A stretch of 64,000 bases of DNA, from NCBI RefSeq assembly GCF_947568905.1, contig NC_079166.1, forward strand, positions 70,308,001 through 70,372,000, read 5' to 3'. The first letter of the stretch is position 1, and each line of letters begins with the position of its first letter. The notes below the pieces were generated by a model. It made no database searches. It had not been told where the DNA came from and saw nothing but the letters and a program-made list of their open reading frames with translations. Positions 35,226 through 64,000 of the stretch are shown here, in pieces. Source of the stretch: Ostrea edulis (taxonomy: Eukaryota). The position numbers and the translations under genes were made by a program.

Positions 35226-36662
35226 ATGGCGTCAACGTTCATTCCACAAACATGGGAAATGTACGATATGTTCCAGGCCCTGCTACAGGCTCCATCGTAT
35301 CATCTTTTCTTCGAAGCACTGCTAATTATCTGGATTTTCAAATTACTGTTTTTCTCAAAGGCGTATGCCCCAGAATCTGTCCTGACTGAAAAGGAAAAGG
35401 AGGAGTTGATTGCGGAATGGCAGCCGGAACCTTTAGCACCCGAAATTCCAGAGGATCACCCGGTCCTACAGGCCATGGAGAATAACATAATAACTGGAAA
35501 GCCAGGGAAATATGTCACAATTAACGGAAAGTCGTGTATAAATATGGCAACATTGAACTTTTTAGGTATGGCTGGTGACCCTTCAGTTGAGTCTGCAGCA
35601 ATTGAGACTCTGAAAAAGTATGGCGTTGGCTCATGTGGACCTAGAGGGTTCTATGGCACTATGGATGTCCATTTAGAACTAGAGGACAAGATAGCCAAGT
35701 TCATGAACTGTGAGGAAGCCATTCTGTATGCATTTGGATTTGCTACAATAGCAAGTGCCATACCCGCTTACTCGAAACGAGGTGATGTCATTTTCGCAGA
35801 TGAGGGTGTGTGCTTTGCTATTCAGAAAGGACTAATTGCCTCAAGAAGCAAAATCAAGTGGTTCAAGCACAATGATATGGATGATCTAGAACGTCTCCTT
35901 CTGGAACAAGCGAAAGAAGATAAGAAAAACCCCAAGAAAGCCAAAGTGACAAGAAGATTTCTGGTTGTGGAAGGACTCTATGTAAACTATGGAGACTTGT
36001 GCCCACTTCCAAAATTAGTGGAACTAAAGTGGAAGTACAAAGTCCGTCTCTTCATTGAAGAAAGTTTATCATTTGGAGTTCTTGGTGCTACAGGAAAAGG
36101 CGTGACTGAACATTTCAACATCCCCCAAGATGAAATTGACTTAATAGCAGCAGCGTTAGAAAATGCTATTGGATCAACTGGAGGTTTCTGCTGTGGAAAG
36201 AAATATATTGTGGATCATCAACGACTCTCAGGGTTGGGGTACTGTTTTTCTGCCTCTTTACCTCCAATGCTGGCCACAGCAGCCATCCAGTCATTGCATT
36301 TGATTGACAATCAACCAACCATGTTGATTCAGTTGCGAGAGAACTGTGAAAAAATCCACGAGAAGCTGAAAGAGATAAATGGAGTCCTTATAGTTGGAGA
36401 GGCGTTGTCACCGATCAAGCATATAAGATTGGCCGAACCAAGCACTGATCGTGATTTTGATGTTCAGATTTTGCAGAAGGTGGCCGATCTCTCCAGAGAA
36501 AACAAAGTAGCCGTAACTTTAGCTCGGTACTTGAGTGAGGAAGAACACAAACTTCCTGTGCCAAGCATCAGAATTTCTGTAAACAGTCAACTCTCAAATG
36601 ATGAAATTGAAAATGTGTGCACTACACTTAGTGACGCATTTCAAAAAGTTCTCGCCCATTAA
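35226..36662 (+). CDS. SPTLC1: Serine palmitoyltransferase subunit 1 (LCB1), 478 aa, single coding exon
   Basis: Uninterrupted ORF with Kozak GCCATGG and an N-terminal hydrophobic helix (YHLFFEALLIIWIFKLLFF). It contains YGVGSCGPRGFYGT, FKHNDM and ENAIGSTGGFCCG; the last shows no PLP-binding Lys, as expected for LCB1. Confidence 0.97.
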   Translation: MASTFIPQTWEMYDMFQALLQAPSYHLFFEALLIIWIFKLLFFSKAYAPESVLTEKEKEELIAEWQPEPLAPEIPEDHPVLQAMENNIITGKPGKYVTINGKSCINMATLNFLGMAGDPSVESAAIETLKKYGVGSCGPRGFYGTMDVHLELEDKIAKFMNCEEAILYAFGFATIASAIPAYSKRGDVIFADEGVCFAIQKGLIASRSKIKWFKHNDMDDLERLLLEQAKEDKKNPKKAKVTRRFLVVEGLYVNYGDLCPLPKLVELKWKYKVRLFIEESLSFGVLGATGKGVTEHFNIPQDEIDLIAAALENAIGSTGGFCCGKKYIVDHQRLSGLGYCFSASLPPMLATAAIQSLHLIDNQPTMLIQLRENCEKIHEKLKEINGVLIVGEALSPIKHIRLAEPSTDRDFDVQILQKVADLSRENKVAVTLARYLSEEEHKLPVPSIRISVNSQLSNDEIENVCTTLSDAFQKVLAH

Positions 36663-55433: not shown

Positions 55434-56711
55434 TCGAGTGGGTGGGTGGGTGGGTTGTATATTTTTAGGGTGTTGCTAAAACGCGGAACGGAAAATATTA
55501 TATGCAATAATGTTATGAGGAGGTCTGTATTTTGTAAAATCAAAAGGCTTATTATGAACAAGGGAAACAGAAATTACAGAGAGAACAGGAAGTCATCCTT
55601 AGAATCCACATGTATTTTAAAACGATAGATTTTGTGGATGAATGTACCAACAGGCGCTTGCTTAATATTTTGCATAGTAAGTTTTAATAAAAATATTATG
55701 CAAGCGCCTGTTGGTACGATCCTTTTCCCCGGCTTTGTCACCCCCCCCCCCCCCGATTGTGACAGTATATGTTGTTTCACAAATGAAGAAGAAAAATAAG
55801 ATAAACATACTGAAAAAGACTTGAATTTCAATTGAACCCCTTTCAAATTATATTACTTTATTCTGACTACTACCTTAATTAAGAAACGATTTTTATGAGC
55901 TTATCCAATGAATTAAAGGTACCCCCTTCCTGAAAACAACATTGTAAAAGATAAACTAATTTTTTGAACAATTTCCTCCAAAGATAGCCTATTTAAATTG
56001 AACGTGCTTTTAATCGAACTAGAGGTGTTTAAGATAACTGAATTTGAATTTAGTTCTACACCTGGTAAATAGACATTTATGTATCACATCAAATTTCAAA
56101 GCAAACGATCCGGTGTGGAAAAAGTATTTGCCTCATTTGGGATGGATTTATGTGAAAGTTCGTACATTTACCGATATCCTGCGGATTAGTGTTGAAACTG
56201 AAGAGATACGACGGGAAGGAAAGATTTAAACAGAACCAATGTAAACCAGGGTGAAGTTTACAACCCATAGTAAGAGGAAATAACAGATTTATTTCTTAGT
56301 ATACGAAATAGCTAAAAGGCTAACACAGAATTTATGCTTGAATGGAATTAAGTCATCTCATTTAATATTAATCTAAAGGTTAAGCTATATACGCGAGTAT
56401 TTAGTTTAGAAATGAACTGCCAGAAGTCCTCCCTCTTTATAGGATTGGAGTGCTGCGGTCACTAATTCTCTGTTAGTAAAAAAAATAATAAATCAAACAC
56501 AAGATGTTTAACTTGTTGACTTAAAAACATAATGAATTATTTCGTTCTTTTATATACATATCACACTCCATGTACAGACACATGCACGGTATTATGTGTA
56601 AAAACATGTGTTAATGACGTTTTACCACGGGAGGGGGGGGGGGTATATAAACCACGCGTGTTATTTTCATTCTCTACCTATAGGTGTCATTGCTCGCTAA
56701 CACCTCTGTCA

Positions 56712-56795
56712 CACAGGCACTCGACGTTTTAAATATTATGTTTACAGGAAGACAATTTTTTTTATTATAGATATTTAAAACGTCGAGTGCCTGTG
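56712..56795. mobile_element. 84-bp MITE with perfect 25-bp TIRs and an 8-bp TSD
   Basis: TIR CACAGGCACTCGACGTTTTAAATAT. CTCTGTCA is duplicated at 56704-56711 and 56796-56803. Confidence 0.95.
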
Positions 56796-57170
56796 CTCTG
56801 TCAATTATGCCGAAATTTCAAAATTCTTGTATAAAACGCTTTGTAAAATCTTATATTGTTGATTTTAATAAAATTGAATCATTTCCCCCTGATTTTTCGC
56901 GTTATCTTATCTAAATTAATCATTTTAATTTTTAAATTCCGTTCCATGTTTTAGCAACACGTACCCGTATTTTCATTGTTTCGAAGGGTGCATGCAACAC
57001 CGAGTTAGCCCGCATAGTATATCATACGTGTGTTAAAATACGTAAGAATGAGTGAAAATAGGCTAAATCATTTCATTTTTATCTGTACAGACACTGCGAC
57101 ACTCGTCGACTTGTTAGTTTAAATTGTAAATTGTCAGTTAATAAATTCGACCCGTGTACGTGCCAAATTA

Positions 57171-57180
57171 GCGCATGCGC
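57171..57180. promoter_or_regulatory. NRF1-type palindrome GCGCATGCGC
   Basis: Perfect 10-bp core in a local CpG patch ~830 bp upstream of the Mondo-like ATG. Motif match only. Confidence 0.4.
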
Positions 57181-58008
57181 GATAGCCTAGTCTGGGGAAA
57201 ACATGAAAATATAGTCCTAGATAAACAAAAGAATCCCACTGCTCTATAGCTATTTAAGTACTTTATTTGCAACTTGGAGATATTTTTAAAAAATGTCATG
57301 AACTATGTTAAAAATTCATGAGTCTCTTGAAGTTCACTATAGACAAGAACGATAGAAATATTCCCGACGTCTCAATTTTAAAAAAATTGGAATGACTAAA
57401 TTGAGAGAGAGAGAGAGAGAGATTAGGAAAGGTCGAGGGATGAGCGCGTCTGTTCTGGCCACCATATTATAAACACTCATCTACCCGCAGTAGCTTTCTT
57501 TACTTTTAAAGCACCGATTAATTTGATAAAATGCAATGGTTCACTGAACTCCCCTTTCTAGGCCTAGATCCGCCACCCAGGTGTTAGGCCAACTGGTTTC
57601 ATCCTGTTAGCCCAGTTTTAATCTCGAAGATCGTTACAAATATTCAATTGAGAGGATGGATCATTTTTTAAAGTTTTCAATTTACCTTCTATGCATAAAA
57701 TTTATAATAGAAATTCAGTAAACAAACTACAGCCTATATCGCGATCGCGGCATGTGCATCAAGTGCACGTGTTTATATTAATGCACAACAACCACAATTA
57801 TTTTATTTTAAATCAGCAAACAGGTCTACTCTTACATTTTTTACTAAAGTCACAACAATATTTTAGGATTGGAAACGTTTCACATTTTTAAAACGTCAAA
57901 ACAAAGCATTTTCATATGGATTCGAGATTATTTTCGCAATGCATTGTGGTATACCAGTATATAACATTGGCGCTCAGTGCTGAGCTGGGCCGACAAGGTG
58001 ATTTCATA

Positions 58009-58622
58009 ATGACGGGTCATTGTGATTACCAAACTGAACTGGATTTAAGTAACCTCCACAAGGAAATAACTGAAAAACTACAGGTCAGAATTTCTTTTAT
58101 AATATATTTTCAACGATTTAACAATATTCTGAAAATAACAAAACGTGCTGTCGCTTAAGTCGATGTCTGCTTCACATGTACACATTTCCACTGATTTTGT
58201 CAACTCTTCCAGATCTAGTACTTGATGATTTTAATACATTTTTACTTCATATTTCTATTACAATCCTTGTATCAAACTGTTTTACAGCATCCAAGACATC
58301 TTCATAGACATCATCATACTTCTTTACACCACACAACAGTAATTTCATTCTGAAGGTGTTTCTCTGTCGAAATCGCAACCGGCAAGAAATTGAAACGAGC
58401 TAAGCGCCGTTTATATACTGTGGTGTCACAGATCACATGGTAAAAGCATTCAAGTAATTCTGATTGGCTGATAACATTCGTGCATGTTAATCAGTTCTGT
58501 AAACGTCACAAGTATGGAGTATATGAAAAGTCACGAGGAATATTTGGGTTAACATTGTGACGTCAAAAGGTCACTGAATGAATCAAGATGGAAGGTGTTC
58601 CGAATGTTGAATTTTACTTAGT

Positions 58623-58655
<33 letters not shown>

Positions 58656-61600
58656 GTATTTAAAAGTTTCAGCATTCTGGATTCTGTTGAATTGTAACTT
58701 AATAAAGCTGCATTTTAGAATTTAGAATCTAAATGGATAGTTGTTTTCCATTAACTATATAGATGTCTGATGGTGTCAAGATAAATATGTATTGAAAATT
58801 GCATACTGTCACCCAAAACCACACAGCACGTGCACAAAATCATAGAAGATTCAGTATTTTATATATCAAGGGAGAATGTTGACCTGGTATTGGTTAATTG
58901 GGATAATAATTTGTGTGTGTGTTTGATATTGTTTTACAGAAAGCTTGCCAATGGGATTTTTGATAAAATATTCTTAGGATAAATTTGATACTTGTATGTA
59001 TTAAGCATGGACTTGCAACACTTTCAAATGTACTAATTTAATTTTTTGTGCAGGTAAATGGAAGAGTAAAAAGAAAAACCCGACACAGAGCAACAAAAAG
59101 CCCTCCCGATGTGAGTTCTCCTTCATCTCCCCAGTCACCGAGAACTCAGTCTGGTAAATGTGGGCGTCCAGCGAATCCGATCCCCAGACACAAAAGGGAC
59201 TCCCACATCAAAGCCGAATACAGGAGGAGGGATAAAATTCAGGTTTGCAACGGCTCAAATTGAATTCTGATATATATTGTAGATTTTTGGCTTTTCTCTT
59301 CACAATATATATATTTATGTAACATATATATATGGTAAGTATTGAATATGTAGCAAATCTTCATTTTTCTGGCAAGTCTTCTTTTATTAGTTTTCTTTTA
59401 AGCATGATTTTGTCTGTTATTTTTTCATGGTTATTGAATGTAGTACGACTTGCAAAAAGAAAGCCTGACCATAATTGGCCAGTGTATCCAATATTTAGGC
59501 TAGGAAATTTGGAAAAGTGCCCCCTATATCTCTTTTGATTCCAAATCAGGTAAGGTGTGTTTATAGACAGTGCAATCATTCAGGGGTAAGTTTGATTGGA
59601 TGTGTTGAGTAGTAATGTACACTTTGTACTATTTCTCACTAAAGCATCTTTATTTGCCCAAAATATGTGAAAATGTAGAACTAAGAATTTCAGGCCTTAA
59701 AAACACACAAAAAAATCTGTACAATTCACATATTGAAAGGGCAAACTTCTAGAAATGTCTTCTGTTTGAGCAATATCAAGGTATTTTATCACCCTTAAAT
59801 GAAAATGTATCCTATAGTATTGCCAGAAAAGGAGACATATCTTTGGTATTTATGTATATTTTGACTATCATGTTGAACTTTTTCTTTTTCAGAATATAGA
59901 AATTGTTATAAAGTTTGATAATTTTGTTAATCCAGTTGGTTTATATTTACAGAAAGGATTTGAAAGTTTAAGGTCATTGGTTCCCTCACTTGAAGATGTG
60001 TCAGAAAAAGAGAGCAAAGCTGTTATGCTGTTTAAAAGTAAGTATCCCCAGAACCAGAAATTAGGATACAAAGACTCTTAGTTAGAAGGGGGAGTCACTC
60101 ATGGGCACCTACTAGTGTGAGGGGATTTTTTAAGACAACACTGCTCTTTCTGTGCGTGCGCTGATTTCACTTCTGTGCTAAAGGACACTTGATGCAAACA
60201 AAAAAGTGGGATACATGGGTTGATATTTATATTTTTTGCCTTAGTTTGGTTGTAATAAGTACAAGTATAAAATTCCTTTAAAAATTTAAGGGACTTGCAA
60301 ATTTCTATGATGTTCAAAAGTTGAAATATATTACCCTTCCCTATATGATATGAATTTACTATTTTGGACTTAATTGAGAAATCAAAGGAATAAATTACAA
60401 ATACAATAAATTTTGAATTTGTTTTACATATAGAAGCATAAATATAGTTTTGATTTTCAATGTTTTTGAAAAAAATTTGTAGCAAGTGTCGTTAGGTTTT
60501 AAACAGTCTTTGAAAATTTTAAAGAACATTTGTTTTGTTATCTGTAAATTGCGAAAAAGCACAGAAAAAAGTTCATTTGAAGCCAGAGAGAGGAATGTTT
60601 GGGGCATCATATGCTAGGCTCTGTTAAGTTTAGTTTGCCCTCTTTTGTGAGGGGGCATCTAACCCCAAAATTTTGACTTGTCTCCCTCTTGTAGCTGCTG
60701 AATACTGTCGGCAACTTAAGGGCGAATGTAGGGGGCTCACCGATGAGGCGGCTGCTTTGCGGCAAGAAATCCAGTCCCTGGGTACTCAGATTCAGTAAGT
60801 CAAAAACATTTTAAATGTTTGACCATGCTCTGTATGTATGATCTCTATTCATGGTTGTATCTAACCATGATTTATACCTATATATATTTGTATATATATT
60901 CATAATAAGTGCTTACATTACTAAATCTCTATTCGTTTCTTCCAGATATTAGATATTGATGCCAAGTTGTTGGATACAAGATATGTAAACTAGTATAGAA
61001 TAATATACAGAAACTTTGCTTTCTTTTGTAGGTACAATAAATTATATTGAATGATTTATGTTTATATGTAGTTAGAATTTGTGCTGAAATGTATCTGACT
61101 AATTTTTCTTTTTGTTTCAGAAAAAGCATCAATTTGATGCACATTTTATATTATTAATGATTTGTTTTATTTTCAGGAACATTTGGTAAGATACTCGTAG
61201 ATAGCATAATGAAATATGATAATACTAATTATTCTTTTTTTAAAATTCTTAGTATGAGACTAAATGTAGAATGATGATTTGTATCTTTTGCAGGTGATAA
61301 CTTCTAGTTAATTAGCTTAGTGATCCAACAACTTGGTTTAAGGAGATATTTTCCTGCTTTGATGCCCTCATGAACAAAAAAAGAAAAATGAAATAATAGT
61401 TTGAATATGTGGAACATAACTTCAAATGGTTGAAGTTCTAAAAAAAAAATTGATTTAGATGAAAATATTTCTGTGAATAATGAAAATTCAGGGATATTCT
61501 GGAAAAAATCTCCTTATAAAACTTTTGGGGATTGAACATTTCCCATCAATTTGCAGTGGGTATTTGGAAGATGGTTTAGTCTTTAAATCCCTCTGCATTT

Positions 61601-63257
61601 CCTTAACTCAGACAGCAATTGTTAACATGGCCTTTTTGACTTTTCCAGTGACCTTCAGACAGAGCTGCCGGTGACAGGAGTGGACACTGTTGAGGAACCA
61701 CCCAGCACAGACATTGACAAGCTTTACGAAGAATATGTGGCTACTCAGACCAGAAAAAACTGGAAGTTCTACCTTGTATCCTCTTCAAACTTGATGTACA
61801 TTTACAAGCCTCTTTTGGTGTGTGATGCAGTGAGGAATTCATGTTTATATTGAAAACTATTTTAGTTTCCACCAATTAAAACCTTTGTAAGAATGTTAGG
61901 GTCCGGTCAAATGGCAGGTGCTCTGTAATAATCGCTCTGTTTCTCCATCAGCACTTCCTATGGCATGCAACAGGGTTTTCGATAAGTAAGCAGGTGAATT
62001 AGAATTTTAAACAGGTCATGTTGAGCATCATTACCCATTACATCAACTATCTGTCACATAAGATATGATTGAATGCATGTATATATTGCTTATTCATTAA
62101 AATTGCAATTTCATGAATGAAAAATCACTTCATGTAATTTAAAAATCTTTTGGGAACAAACCCAACAACTTAGTATTGATGCTTGAGGTCGCTTCGTTTT
62201 TGTTTATTTACATTCGTATTGAACATTAATGTTTTCATTCCATTGTCAACTTTCAGGATAGCTCAGATGTAACCCATGCATAAAGCAACCCACACATGAC
62301 CCAAAATAGCATCAGTATTTTATTATTAGGGGAAAAAACAAGGTTGGAACTGATATTGATACATTGTTCTATTTTATTGAGAATCATGTCATCACATTTG
62401 AGGAAACTCGAGCTGGCAATTTCTTTCAATCAGAACGGCAACATTTAGCCAGGTGTCACTGCATATTGAAAACCCTGCATGCAATAACTTAAGTTTCCTT
62501 TGGAAGATTTTCAAAAATTTTATATCCTTGGATTAAACAGAGAATTTTAGACCCTTCTCAATTTTCAGGCTTCTGTCTGGCTGTCCGTCAGCATTTGCCA
62601 TGACACTGCCACACGATAAGTTTCTTTTGGGAGATTTTCATAACTTTAATACGTAATACTTCGATTAGGCAAAGGAAAACCCCTTTCTATTTCAATGTTT
62701 ATCAGCCTTGTCATTACAGAGTTATGGGACTTCCAGCACTTTCTATTTCAATGTTTATCAGCCTTGTCATTACAGAGTTATGGGACTTCCAGCACTTTCT
62801 ATGTCATCCCAGCCTCCAAAATATTCATTGCAGGACCCTTTCGAACTTGTCAGTTTTTTAGTGTTTTGATATATTGATTTCAAAAATGAATCTCAGTAGG
62901 AGCATTCATGTCGTACTTGCACATTAAGTTAAACTGGCCCATAATTTTTGCAAATACTTTTTACTTTAAGGCTACATATTTGGCATGAACATTCCTTTAT
63001 ATGACAATTTGAATTCATTGCACTGATAAATCTCACCCAAAAAAATCAAAGGATGGGGCCCCAATTTGATGTATTTTTAATATCACATTACAATTGTTGA
63101 TGACAAGTTTCCTTAAGTCTTTATCAGTTCAGTTTCATGATGAGGCCTCTGTTTGAGTCCTTTAAAGTCATGATTACCTCAACGACGTCTGATGAGTTTT
63201 CCCAATCGGTCAACAACTGGGTCAAGGAAAAACTTTCACTGCCAAAACTAAGGATAG
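58009..63257 (+). CDS. Mondo/ChREBP (MLXIP/MLXIPL)-family bHLH-Zip + DCD protein, short form, 3' end missing
   Basis: Exons 58009-58083 (least certain; an upstream in-frame ATG lies at 57916), 59054-59242, 59953-60037, 60695-60794, 61649-61775 and 63128-63257 join in frame. Product includes KRDSHIKAEYRRRDKIQKGFESLRSLVP..ESKAVMLFKTAEYC..ELPVTGV..NWKFYLFSFMMRPLFESF..W..KLSLPKLR, which follows the ChREBP/MondoA C-terminal pattern rather than MLX. Confidence 0.85.
58258..58347 (-). CDS. Candidate 29-aa micropeptide MKLLLCGVKKYDDVYEDVLDAVNSLIQGL, nested antisense in intron 1 of the Mondo-like gene
   Basis: ATG at 58347 and tandem stops TAA TAG. The codons show a GNN bias. TATATAAA lies at 58417-58410, CCAAT at 58467-58463, and ATTAAA ~25 nt after the stop. 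Confidence 0.45.
58391..58467 (-). promoter_or_regulatory. CCAAT + TATA + Inr-like arrangement upstream of the small ORF
   Basis: On the minus strand: CCAATC (58467), CATGTG E-box (~58439-58434), TATATAAA (58417) and TCAATTT with its A at 58391, 26 nt after the first T of TATA. Confidence 0.45.
58558..58565. promoter_or_regulatory. Full CRE palindrome TGACGTCA
   Basis: Exact 8-bp CREB/ATF site, ~140 bp upstream of the small-ORF TATA box. Confidence 0.4.
61776..63127 (+). other. U12-type (minor spliceosome) GT-AG intron
   Basis: 5' site GTATCCTCT; branch site TTCCTTAAG at 63109-63117, ~11 nt from the AG; no long pyrimidine tract. Splicing restores NWKFYL/FSFMMRPLFESF. Confidence 0.85.
62683..62802. 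repeat. Exact 56-bp tandem duplication
   Basis: CTTTCTATTTCAATGTTTATCAGCCTTGTCATTACAGAGTTATGGGACTTCCAGCA x2 plus 8 bp. Confidence 0.9.
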
Positions 63258-63688
63258 GTAATGCACATATTTGATCTGCTACAGAAGTACATTGTTGGGT
63301 GCACATTATTTGTTATGAAAAGGCTGTCAGAATATGCTGTGTGCTGGCATGCCCATTGTCGTTTAATATGGACAACATTGTTAGGAGCTGGCAAATCAGG
63401 TGCTTTTCTATGAAAACAAGTAACTATTTCATAGGTACTTAATTGACCATGGATAAATGAATTTTTCAGAAGATAAAGTATGTATTGAAATGTCTCTAGC
63501 ATTGTGCAAATCAAAATTAGTGCCGTATGTCTTTGATCCACTCTGTGAATCACAATACTGAGTTCCAAAATATAGGATATTTTAACCAAGATAATATTTA
63601 GATTTAGCCAATCAAAACACATCGTTGATTACCCTTGTGTGCTTCTTCATTCTTTCCATGTGACAACTTCAAAACATTGAAAATGTGT

Positions 63689-63817
63689 NNNNNNNNNNNN
63701 NNNNNNNNNNNNNNNNNNNNNNNNNNNNNNNNNNNNNNNNNNNNNNNNNNNNNNNNNNNNNNNNNNNNNNNNNNNNNNNNNNNNNNNNNNNNNNNNNNNN
63801 NNNNNNNNNNNNNNNNN
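63689..63817. other. Assembly gap
   Basis: Run of N. Confidence 1.
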
Positions 63818-64000
63818 TAGGGCAAGTCAGTTAAGAAAGGACACCTGTCACTCAAATGAATTTGTAAGCCCCTGAATGCATTTTTGCTCGTATGTTTAGT
63901 ATTGTTTAATTAAAAACAAACAAGTGCATGCACATAGACTAGTACATTTTCTCTTTATTTCGGCTGCAGTTAAATGAACTTTCAAGATCGTGGGATTATT

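What the first reader, a model, noticed from the sequence alone, without database searches (positions are those of the whole stretch)
58215..58570. Hidden antisense micro-gene inside the Mondo-like intron
Seen, in order on the minus strand within ~350 bp: CRE palindrome (58558-58565), CCAAT (58467), E-box, TATATAAA (58417), Inr-like TCAATTT (58391), a ~44-nt leader, ATG (58347), 29 codons (12 starting with G), tandem TAA TAG, then ATTAAA. The ORF is below the 60-aa cut-off of the supplied track. Inference: an inducible TATA-driven micropeptide gene. Its YEDVLDAVNSL segment is amphipathic and loosely fits the Mad/Mxd Sin3-interaction pattern (IQMLLEAADYL), which would be striking next to an Mlx-network factor, but this resemblance is speculative. 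It could also be a first exon using the TT/GTAATA donor.
Basis: partly seen in the sequence, partly recalled or inferred. Interest (0 to 1): 0.75.

Follow-up and report, generated by a model that had tools for sequence, protein, structure and literature searches.

The report
Conserved antisense promoter, not a micropeptide gene
Inside the first intron of an oyster Mondo-like transcription-factor gene there is a backward-facing TATA promoter conserved from oysters to scallops, but the 33-codon reading frame behind it is not conserved, so it is most likely a small non-coding antisense unit and not a hidden peptide gene.

Summary
The promoter motifs are real and sit at the stated coordinates on the minus strand: CRE, CCAAT, E-box, TATATAAA and an Inr-like site. 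The ORF was misread. The ATG is at 58348, and the frame has 33 codons (MKLLLCGVKKYDDVYEDVLDAVKQFDTRIVIEI) ending in TGA.

The window is Ostrea edulis. A spliced transcript from a related oyster confirms that the unit lies in intron 1 (58084-59053) of a bHLHZip "MLX-interacting protein-like" gene.

I fetched the orthologous loci of Saccostrea echinata, S. cucullata, Magallana gigas and Pecten maximus.
- **Promoter:** the TATA box and a block just downstream of it (ATTTCTTGCC.GTTG...GAC) are kept in all five species with the same spacing. CCAAT and the E-box keep their spacing in the four oysters.
- **3' end:** an A(A/T)TAAA signal lies 154-156 nt downstream in the four oysters.
- **ORF:** it is not kept. 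The ATG is ATC in both Saccostrea species, which also carry in-frame stops and a frameshift. M. gigas has a 26-aa peptide sharing only MKLL. The scallop reads ATG TAA.

A HMMER search of 1.84 billion proteins found no relative. The Sin3-motif consensus is not met.

Verdict: an ancient antisense core promoter, probably driving a short non-coding RNA. No transcription data could be consulted.

The parts
58558..58565 (.). Full CRE palindrome TGACGTCA. Present in O. edulis but not in the other three oysters.
   Evidence: One search finds a single match in the window. Searches find it absent from intron 1 of Saccostrea and M. gigas. Pecten has a full CRE nearer its TATA box.
58503..58511 (-). TTGTGACGT, a CRE half-site shared with M. 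gigas.
   Evidence: Alignment A2, columns 10-18.
58461..58472 (-). CCAAT box, ATCAGCCAATCA, about 75 nt upstream of the predicted start site.
   Evidence: CCAATCA is invariant in the four oysters, 28 nt from the E-box in all of them.
58434..58439 (-). E-box. It reads CATGTG here and in M. gigas, and CACGTG in Saccostrea. In the alignment it falls opposite the scallop CRE.
58410..58417 (-). TATA box, TATATAAA.
   Evidence: TATATAA is invariant in five species. It is 27 nt from the downstream block in both O. edulis and Pecten.
58366..58392 (-). Inr-like start (A at 58391) and the conserved downstream block CAATTTCTTGCCGGTTG....TCGAC.
   Evidence: ATTTCTTG.C..TTG.G....GAC is invariant in five species. 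Combined with the TATA box, the pattern is unique in the 895-Mb genome.
58247..58348 (-). ATG ORF of 33 codons plus TGA. Not conserved, so probably fortuitous.
58294..58318 (.). 12-nt tandem duplication (2.1 copies) inside the ORF. It coincides with the DDVYEDV stretch and the G-first codon periodicity.
58242..58248 (-). GAAGTAA, a motif resembling a 5' splice site. Conserved at this position in Ostrea and Saccostrea. The ORF's stop codon lies inside it.
58230..58235 (-). Poly(A) signal ATTAAA. It reads AATAAA in S. cucullata. It lies 154-156 nt after the start of the Inr block in all four oysters.
58181..58184 (-). TGTG, a possible GU-rich downstream element about 50 nt after the poly(A) signal. 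Invariant in Ostrea and Saccostrea.
   Evidence: Alignment A1.
57910..58083 (+). Host gene exon 1. The coding part is 58009-58083 (MTGHCDYQTELDLSNLHKEITEKLQ). The host TATA box is at 57958-57964.
   Evidence: Spliced transcripts L011 and L012 and protein P0001. Promoter motif conserved to scallop.
59054..59242 (+). Host gene exon 2 (basic region of the bHLH). It marks the end of intron 1.
58437..58441 (+). Plus-strand ATG|GT. This could be the alternative donor that gives O. edulis isoform X2 (M|VNGRV...). The GT is GC in a second haplotype.

Best explanation
The sequence at about 58180-58520 is an ancient RNA polymerase II core promoter that points backwards, against its host gene. It has CCAAT, an E-box or CRE-type site, a TATA box and an Inr plus downstream block. 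It lies in intron 1 of the Ostrea edulis Mondo-family bHLHZip gene ('MLX-interacting protein-like').

It faces the host gene's own TATA promoter from about 460 bp away, so the two promoters are convergent. In oysters it most likely produces a short antisense RNA of about 175 nt that is unspliced or minimally processed. That RNA would end at a conserved A(A/T)TAAA signal, about 130 nt before it would reach host exon 1.

The 33-codon ORF is an incidental open frame in an AT-rich transcript, partly created by a 12-nt duplication. It is not the conserved functional product.

What is shown: the position in intron 1, the conservation of the motifs and their spacing, the non-conservation of the ORF, and the lack of protein or RNA-family relatives.

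What is inferred: that the promoter fires, that the RNA ends at the poly(A) signal, and that the unit regulates the host gene. The regulatory route could be head-on transcriptional interference or local chromatin effects near the host start site, possibly steered by bZIP or bHLHZip factors at the CRE/E-box site.
For: **Location**
- The junction of host exon 1 and exon 2 is confirmed by a spliced transcript of a related oyster.
- The window maps to O. edulis. Protein P0007 lies on a contig of 98,268,724 nt, the same length as G000:C3.

**Promoter conservation**
- In the four oysters the spacings are Inr to TATA 27-29 nt, TATA to E-box 23-24 nt and E-box to CCAAT 28 nt.
- TATATAA and ATTTCTTG.C..TTG.G....GAC are invariant in five species including Pecten maximus. 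TATA-to-block spacing is 27 nt in both O. edulis and Pecten.
- The block sits 361-391 nt from the host ATG, and the two TATA boxes are 437-472 bp apart, in all five species.
- The rest of intron 1 cannot be aligned.
- The TATA orientation fits TATAWAAR only on the minus strand.

**3' end**
- AWTAAA lies at +154 to +156 in the four oysters, with a conserved TGTG downstream.

**Polymorphism**
- A second O. edulis haplotype has one variant in 57915-58395, against 12 in 57403-57914.

**ORF not conserved**
-.
- HMMER found no relative. The only hit is a same-species genomic ORF that a gene caller read with TGA as Trp.

**Single copy**
-.
Against: - No transcription data (RNA-seq, CAGE or 3'-end reads) could be consulted, so firing of the promoter and the 3' end are inferred.
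- The gene tables returned with the three oyster loci (L016, L017, L026) and the scallop locus list no minus-strand gene here. They show protein-coding genes only, so a non-coding RNA would not appear.
- No poly(A) signal was seen at the matching position in the scallop.
- O. edulis and M. gigas share the ATG and a collinear frame. Three of the four oysters carry an ORF of 26-33 codons in the unit, so a fast-evolving peptide is not strictly excluded.
- The RNA shows no conserved or unusually stable structure. Any function would therefore lie in the act of transcription or in short sequence motifs.
Confidence: 0.6

Rival explanations
1. The conserved block is an intronic enhancer or other cis-regulatory module for the host gene, read in the plus direction. 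The matches to TATA and Inr would then be transcription-factor sites, not a working antisense core promoter.
For: - It lies in the first intron close to the host promoter, a common place for enhancers.
- The CRE/E-box and CCAAT sites work in either orientation.
- O. edulis isoform X2 (M|VNGRV...) implies plus-strand RNA running through the block, spliced at ATG|GT (58437-58441).
- There is no direct evidence of antisense transcription.
Against: - The invariant TATATAA sits at a fixed 27 nt from a conserved downstream block in five species. That is the signature of a core promoter and fits the consensus only on the minus strand.
- CCAAT lies at about -75, the classical position.
- The conserved poly(A) signal at a fixed +154 to +156 is unexplained by an enhancer.
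- The X2 donor is not conserved in other species and is GC in a second haplotype.
Confidence: 0.2
2. The block is the first exon of a longer spliced antisense transcript, non-coding or with coding exons elsewhere. It would use a 5' splice site such as GAA|GTAA, and it would run across host exon 1 and the host promoter.
For: An AAGTAA-type donor-like motif lies within the first 150 nt in all five species. It is at the same position in Ostrea and Saccostrea, and displaced in M. gigas and Pecten.
Against: - The donor is weak (A at -1, no G at +5).
- A conserved poly(A) signal follows within 11-37 nt.
- No minus-strand protein gene is listed between the two plus-strand neighbours at any of the three oyster loci fetched.
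- HMMER found no protein starting with this peptide.
Confidence: 0.1
3. This is a true micropeptide gene. A short TATA-driven mRNA would encode a fast-evolving peptide of about 26-33 aa, possibly an amphipathic helix acting on the Mondo/Mlx/Mad-Sin3 network.
For: - Transcript layout: a 43-nt leader, an ATG with A at -3, an ORF filling most of a transcript of about 175 nt, and a poly(A) signal right after the stop.
- O. edulis and M. gigas share ATG AAA TTR CTN (MKLL) and an ungapped frame. The substitutions in the DLIEKL / VLDAVKQF stretch are partly conservative.
- The relaxed SID-like pattern matches here. It occurs only 7 times in 92,766 residues of six-frame translation.
Against: - The start codon is lost in both Saccostrea species, which also carry in-frame stops and a frameshift, while their promoter stays intact. 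The scallop has ATG TAA.
- Peptides of different species are unrelated beyond MKLL.
- Substitutions show no third-position bias.
- The codon-usage score is that of a random ORF.
- There are no relatives in 1.84 billion representatives.
- The strict and core SID consensus are not met.
- The acidic core comes from a local 12-nt duplication.
Confidence: 0.07

Closest known systems
Convergent or antisense intragenic promoters and natural antisense transcripts near the 5' end of a host gene (from my own knowledge of NET-seq and CAGE work in mammals and yeast)
   Same: A promoter on the opposite strand a few hundred bp downstream of the host start site, facing it. The transcript is short and ends at a poly(A) signal. 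It has no conserved coding potential.
   Different: Such antisense starts are usually poorly conserved and lack a TATA box. Here a textbook CCAAT/TATA/Inr promoter keeps its sequence, spacing and distance to the host promoter from oysters to a scallop. Whether it is transcribed is untested.
smORF or micropeptide genes (for example tarsal-less/polished rice, sarcolamban/myoregulin; from my own knowledge)
   Same: A very short transcript in which a small ATG ORF fills most of the RNA, with its own promoter and poly(A) signal.
   Different: Known functional smORFs keep their frame and peptide motifs across species. This ORF loses its ATG, gains stops and shifts frame among oysters. It has no homologue in the databases searched.
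[quoted passage not shown]
   Same: YEDVLDAVKQFDTRI is amphipathic and matches the hydrophobic positions and the first Ala.
   Different: The second Ala is Val and the last acidic position is Ile. The alternative A[AV]X[VA][LV] motif also fails. The segment is absent from the other species. No binding test was done.

Membership tests
TATA-containing RNA polymerase II core promoter | A TATA box (TATAWAAR) about 26-31 nt upstream of an initiator-like start | tested here: met
   TATATAAA lies at 58417-58410 and the Inr-like A at 58391, 26 nt from the first T of the TATA box. TATA to the downstream block is 27 nt in both O. edulis and Pecten.
TATA-containing RNA polymerase II core promoter | Elements and spacing conserved at orthologous loci | tested here: met
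   Five-species alignment A4 and the spacing tables.
TATA-containing RNA polymerase II core promoter | A mapped transcription start site | not testable with these tools
   No CAGE or RNA-seq data could be consulted. The exact-peptide look-up for the ORF found no contig.
Natural antisense or convergent intragenic transcript | Lies inside a host gene on the opposite strand | tested here: met
   It lies in intron 1 (58084-59053) of the plus-strand bHLHZip gene. The exon 1-exon 2 junction is seen in transcript L011 and protein P0001.
Natural antisense or convergent intragenic transcript | Conserved 3'-end signal | tested here: met
   AWTAAA lies at +154 to +156 in the four oysters. None was seen at that position in Pecten.
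Conserved micropeptide (smORF) gene | Start codon and reading frame kept in orthologues | tested here: not met
   ATG is ATC in both Saccostrea species. S. echinata has an in-frame TAA. S. cucullata has a stop at codon 3 plus a 1-nt deletion. Pecten reads ATG TAA.
Conserved micropeptide (smORF) gene | Homologous peptides in protein databases | tested here: not met
   phmmer against 1.84 billion representatives gave one hit, P0016. It is a same-species genomic ORF called with TGA read as Trp.
Conserved micropeptide (smORF) gene | Coding-type substitution pattern and codon usage | tested here: not met
   Differences by codon position are 18/9/17, 14/14/21 and 21/12/17, with no third-position excess. 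The codon-usage score is 0.08 bits per codon, in the 84th percentile of random short ORFs.
Mad/Mxd-type Sin3-interaction domain | [quoted passage not shown] | tested here: not met
   The strict pattern and the core AA pattern both fail. Only a relaxed A[AV] version matches.
Mad/Mxd-type Sin3-interaction domain | Binding to Sin3 PAH2 | not tested
   No complex prediction was run, because the report does not claim binding.
Known non-coding RNA family or Pol III type-3 small RNA gene | An Rfam match or a conserved T-run terminator | tested here: not met
   Rfam has no relevant hit in 56500-60500 at E up to 1. T-runs are not conserved among species when read from the sequences. Consensus fold energy is -2.85 kcal/mol and the folding z-score is -0.28.
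DPF1-3 N-terminal domain (PF14051) | A Pfam score above the cut-off | tested here: not met
   The score is 12.5 bits against a cut-off of 27.6. The true DPF gene is on contig C4, and there is no pairwise similarity.

The most novel reading that the evidence does not exclude
The host TATA promoter and the antisense TATA promoter, 437-472 bp apart and facing each other, form an ancient convergent pair kept since before oysters and scallops split. In this reading the antisense unit is a signal-responsive brake, steered through its CRE/E-box site. It would set the output of a Mondo-family nutrient-sensing transcription factor by head-on transcriptional interference, possibly with feedback from the factor itself binding the CACGTG-type site.
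Probability: 0.12. Interest if true: 0.6.

Novelty: new member of a known kind. Interest (0 to 1): 0.35.

Why it matters
The finding removes a tempting false positive. A textbook promoter followed by an ATG ORF and a poly(A) signal is still not a peptide gene when the frame falls apart in sister species.

It also turns up something else. A backward-facing core promoter in intron 1 of a bivalve Mondo-like gene has kept its sequence, internal spacing and distance to the host promoter between oysters and a scallop. By my own knowledge these lineages separated hundreds of millions of years ago. Antisense promoters conserved this well are uncommon. This one offers a concrete, testable handle on how a metabolic transcription factor is regulated in molluscs.

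Tried and rejected
- **DPF/Requiem N-terminal exon.** The weak Pfam hit (E 0.18) is rejected. The real DPF gene is on C4 with the whole domain in one exon, and there is no pairwise similarity.
- **Repeat, transposon or gene family.** The region and the peptide are single copy. The TATA-plus-block pattern is unique in the genome.
- **Inverted duplication of the host promoter and exon 1.** No inverted repeat beyond short chance matches.
- **Known ncRNA or structured RNA.** No Rfam hit, no consensus structure, folding z-score -0.28.
- **Pol III small-RNA gene.** T-runs are not conserved among the species.
- **Exact look-up of the 33-aa product in public assemblies.** Not on record.
- **Distant bivalve genomic contig (JGI BSg2, L013).** No similarity in the intron.
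- **Two metagenome pattern scans for further orthologues.** The first gave 0 hits. The second gave 6 hits with no similarity to the locus.
- **M. gigas UniRef model P0006 and O. edulis P0007.** Neither could be looked up by exact sequence. The NCBI isoform P0020 worked.
- **Glucose-sensing (MCR) motifs.** A regex scan of the six-frame translation of the window found none. This agrees with host proteins of 413-470 aa that begin at exon 1.
- **Complex prediction with Sin3 PAH2.** Not run, because binding is not claimed.
- **Spliced models.** Exons of the window gene were searched one at a time by reference. Full-length queries were database proteins only.
- **N stretches near 63685-63820.** Left untouched.
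- **Human DNA.** No contig looked human.

Full report
**What is in the sequence**

On the minus strand I confirm these elements:
- TGACGTCA at 58558-58565. It is the only copy in 64 kb, against 0.65 expected.
- ATCAGCCAATCA at 58472-58461.
- CATGTG at 58439-58434.
- TATATAAA at 58417-58410.
- TCAATTT with its A at 58391.
- A 43-nt leader.
- ATTAAA at 58235-58230.

The ORF was misread. The ATG is at 58348. The frame runs 33 codons, MKLLLCGVKKYDDVYEDVLDAVKQFDTRIVIEI, to TGA at 58249-58247.

An ORF of this size is ordinary here. The window has 301 ATG ORFs of at least 33 codons. This one has a codon-usage score typical of random short ORFs (0.08 bits per codon, 84th percentile), while real exons score 0.10-0.32. 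A 12-nt tandem duplication at 58294-58318 coincides with the DDVYEDV core and the G-first codon periodicity that looked like a coding signal.

**Context**

The plus strand carries a bHLHZip gene with a Mondo-type C-terminal domain. Its exons are:

| Exon | Window coordinates | Note |
|---|---|---|
| 1 | CDS 58009-58083 | MTGHCDYQTELDLSNLHKEITEKLQ |
| 2 | 59054-59242 | basic region |
| 3 | 59953-60037 | |
| 4 | about 60692-60798 | leucine zipper |
| 5 | about 61650-61793 | |
| 6 | 63128-63258 | |
| last | beyond the window | large exon |

A word search with the exon-2 ORF returned P0001, from a spliced transcript of a Crassostrea-like oyster (L011, L012). It joins ...EITEKLQ to VNGRVKRK....

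A second search returned the annotated orthologues. The O. edulis protein is named 'MLX-interacting protein-like isoform X2'. It lies on a contig of 98,268,724 nt, exactly the length of this window's contig, and it maps back onto the window. The genome is therefore Ostrea edulis.

The region is single copy.

**Comparative test**

I fetched the orthologous loci of Saccostrea echinata (L016), S. cucullata (L017), Magallana gigas (L026) and Pecten maximus (L027). Synteny holds in the three other oyster loci. The gene tables returned with the four loci list no minus-strand protein gene at this place. They list protein-coding genes only.

BLAST and MAFFT alignments show one conserved island, covering roughly 57846-58511. 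It spans the host promoter, exon 1 and the antisense unit up to its CCAAT box. The remainder of intron 1 does not align.

Spacings in the four oysters:

| Interval | Distance |
|---|---|
| Inr block to TATA | 27-29 nt |
| TATA to E-box | 23-24 nt |
| E-box to CCAAT | 28 nt |
| Start of Inr block to A(A/T)TAAA | 154-156 nt |

S. cucullata has AATAAA where the others have ATTAAA. A TGTG follows about 50 nt after the signal in Ostrea and Saccostrea.

In the scallop, at the same offset from the host ATG, the minus strand reads CCAAT boxes, TGACGTCA, TATATAAG, then 27 nt later ATTTCTTGCCAGTTGAGCCGTCGAC. The offset is +391, against +361 to +381 in oysters. TATATAA and ATTTCTTG.C..TTG.G....GAC are invariant in all five species.

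The host promoter motif ATGCATTGTGG(T/G)ATA..AGTATATA is also shared with the scallop. The two TATA boxes face each other at 437-472 bp in every species.

A second O. edulis haplotype (L018, L019; 98.3% identical) has one variant in 57915-58395, against twelve in the 512 nt before it.

**The ORF does not share this conservation**

- At the aligned start, both Saccostrea species read ATC.
- In the O. edulis frame, S. echinata then runs into TAA and has no ATG ORF longer than 8 codons.
- S. cucullata has a stop at codon 3 and a 1-nt deletion. Its own 30-codon ORF (MMRHQNTEF...) is in a shifted frame and is unrelated.
- M. gigas keeps ATG AAA TTG CTT and an ungapped frame, but reads MKLLSFNQLNERKMFQNSMDLIEKLK (26 aa; 5 of 26 identical).
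- The scallop reads ATG TAA.
- Identity over the ORF is about 50%, with no excess of third-position change.
- A phmmer search of 1.84 billion cluster representatives gave one hit, P0016. It is the same genomic stretch in O. edulis reads, called with TGA read as Trp.

**Sin3 idea**

[quoted passage not shown] YEDVLDAVKQFDTRI fails at the second Ala and the last acidic residue. Only a relaxed pattern matches, and that pattern occurs 7 times in 92,766 residues of six-frame translation of this window. Since the segment is absent from the other species, I treat the match as coincidence.

**Other readings tested**

- A weak Pfam hit to the DPF1-3 N-terminal domain is chance.
- There is no Rfam family, no consensus RNA structure and no unusual stability.
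- There is no inverted duplication of the host promoter.
- O. edulis isoform X2 starts M|VNGRV. The plus-strand ATG|GTAAAA at 58437-58441 is a likely alternative donor for it. No other ATG lies on the plus strand between 58299 and 58436.
- That donor is GC in the second haplotype and is absent from the other species. It does not explain the conservation.

**Conclusion**

The interpretation as a micropeptide gene with a Sin3-binding helix is not supported.

The best reading (confidence 0.6) is a conserved antisense core promoter. It would drive a short non-coding RNA that ends just before host exon 1, arranged convergently with the host promoter. A regulatory effect on the host gene is inferred, not shown.

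The rivals are an orientation-independent intronic enhancer (0.2), the first exon of a longer spliced antisense RNA (0.1) and a fast-evolving micropeptide (0.07).

Direct transcription data are the missing piece.

Noticed in passing
window about 60692-60798 (host exon 4); L011, L012, L014, L015; protein P0022: Assembled transcripts from at least three bivalves skip the leucine-zipper exon: a Crassostrea-like oyster, M. gigas, a scallop-like species and one other. Exon 3 joins exon 5 out of frame. The result is a bHLH-only ORF of about 120 aa (…MLFKMTFSRSF…), followed by a separate ORF for the C-terminal domain. This looks like a conserved alternative-splicing event.
   Followed up: partly
window 57935-57965 (+); L027 4936-4968: The host-gene core promoter motif ATGCATTGTGG(T/G)ATA..AGTATATA(A) is conserved from oysters to Pecten maximus. 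In a Crassostrea-like species, however, transcripts start at least 110 nt upstream of the ATG, beyond this TATA box.
   Followed up: partly
window 59243-59594: The first 350 nt or so of host intron 2 fall inside a 545-nt alignment, with exon 2, that is about 77% identical to both Saccostrea species. This is a second conserved non-coding block.
   Followed up: no
window 58437-58441 (+): ATG|GT is the likely end of an alternative or extended first exon that gives O. edulis isoform X2 (MVNGRV…). In a second haplotype the GT is GC (58441 T>C).
   Followed up: partly
window 58633-58657: A long G run on the plus strand is polymorphic. It is 11 nt shorter in the second O. edulis haplotype (L018, L019).
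   Followed up: no
window 56708-56804: A near-perfect long hairpin gives weak miRNA-like Rfam hits (33 bits, below the gathering score). It did not align to Saccostrea, so it is probably an inverted repeat of a mobile element.
   Followed up: no
window 58009-63258 and beyond; proteins P0007, P0020, P0025: The host gene encodes a 413-470 aa Mondo-type bHLHZip protein that begins at a 25-30 aa first exon. A regex scan found no glucose-sensing (MCR) motifs anywhere in the window. Orthologues exist across bivalves (oysters, scallops, mussels, clams), and Mya arenaria has a separate, longer 'MLXPL-like' protein.
   Followed up: partly
P0016; L018 and L019: A 151-aa 'protein' in the public collection is a gene-caller artefact. 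It is this genomic stretch translated with TGA read as Trp.
   Followed up: yes
window 35226-36662 (+) and 39408-40439 (-): Two long uninterrupted ORFs (478 and 343 aa) lie in an otherwise intron-rich region and may be intronless genes. By eye they resemble a serine palmitoyltransferase subunit and a HAD-type phosphatase. This was not checked with any tool.
   Followed up: no
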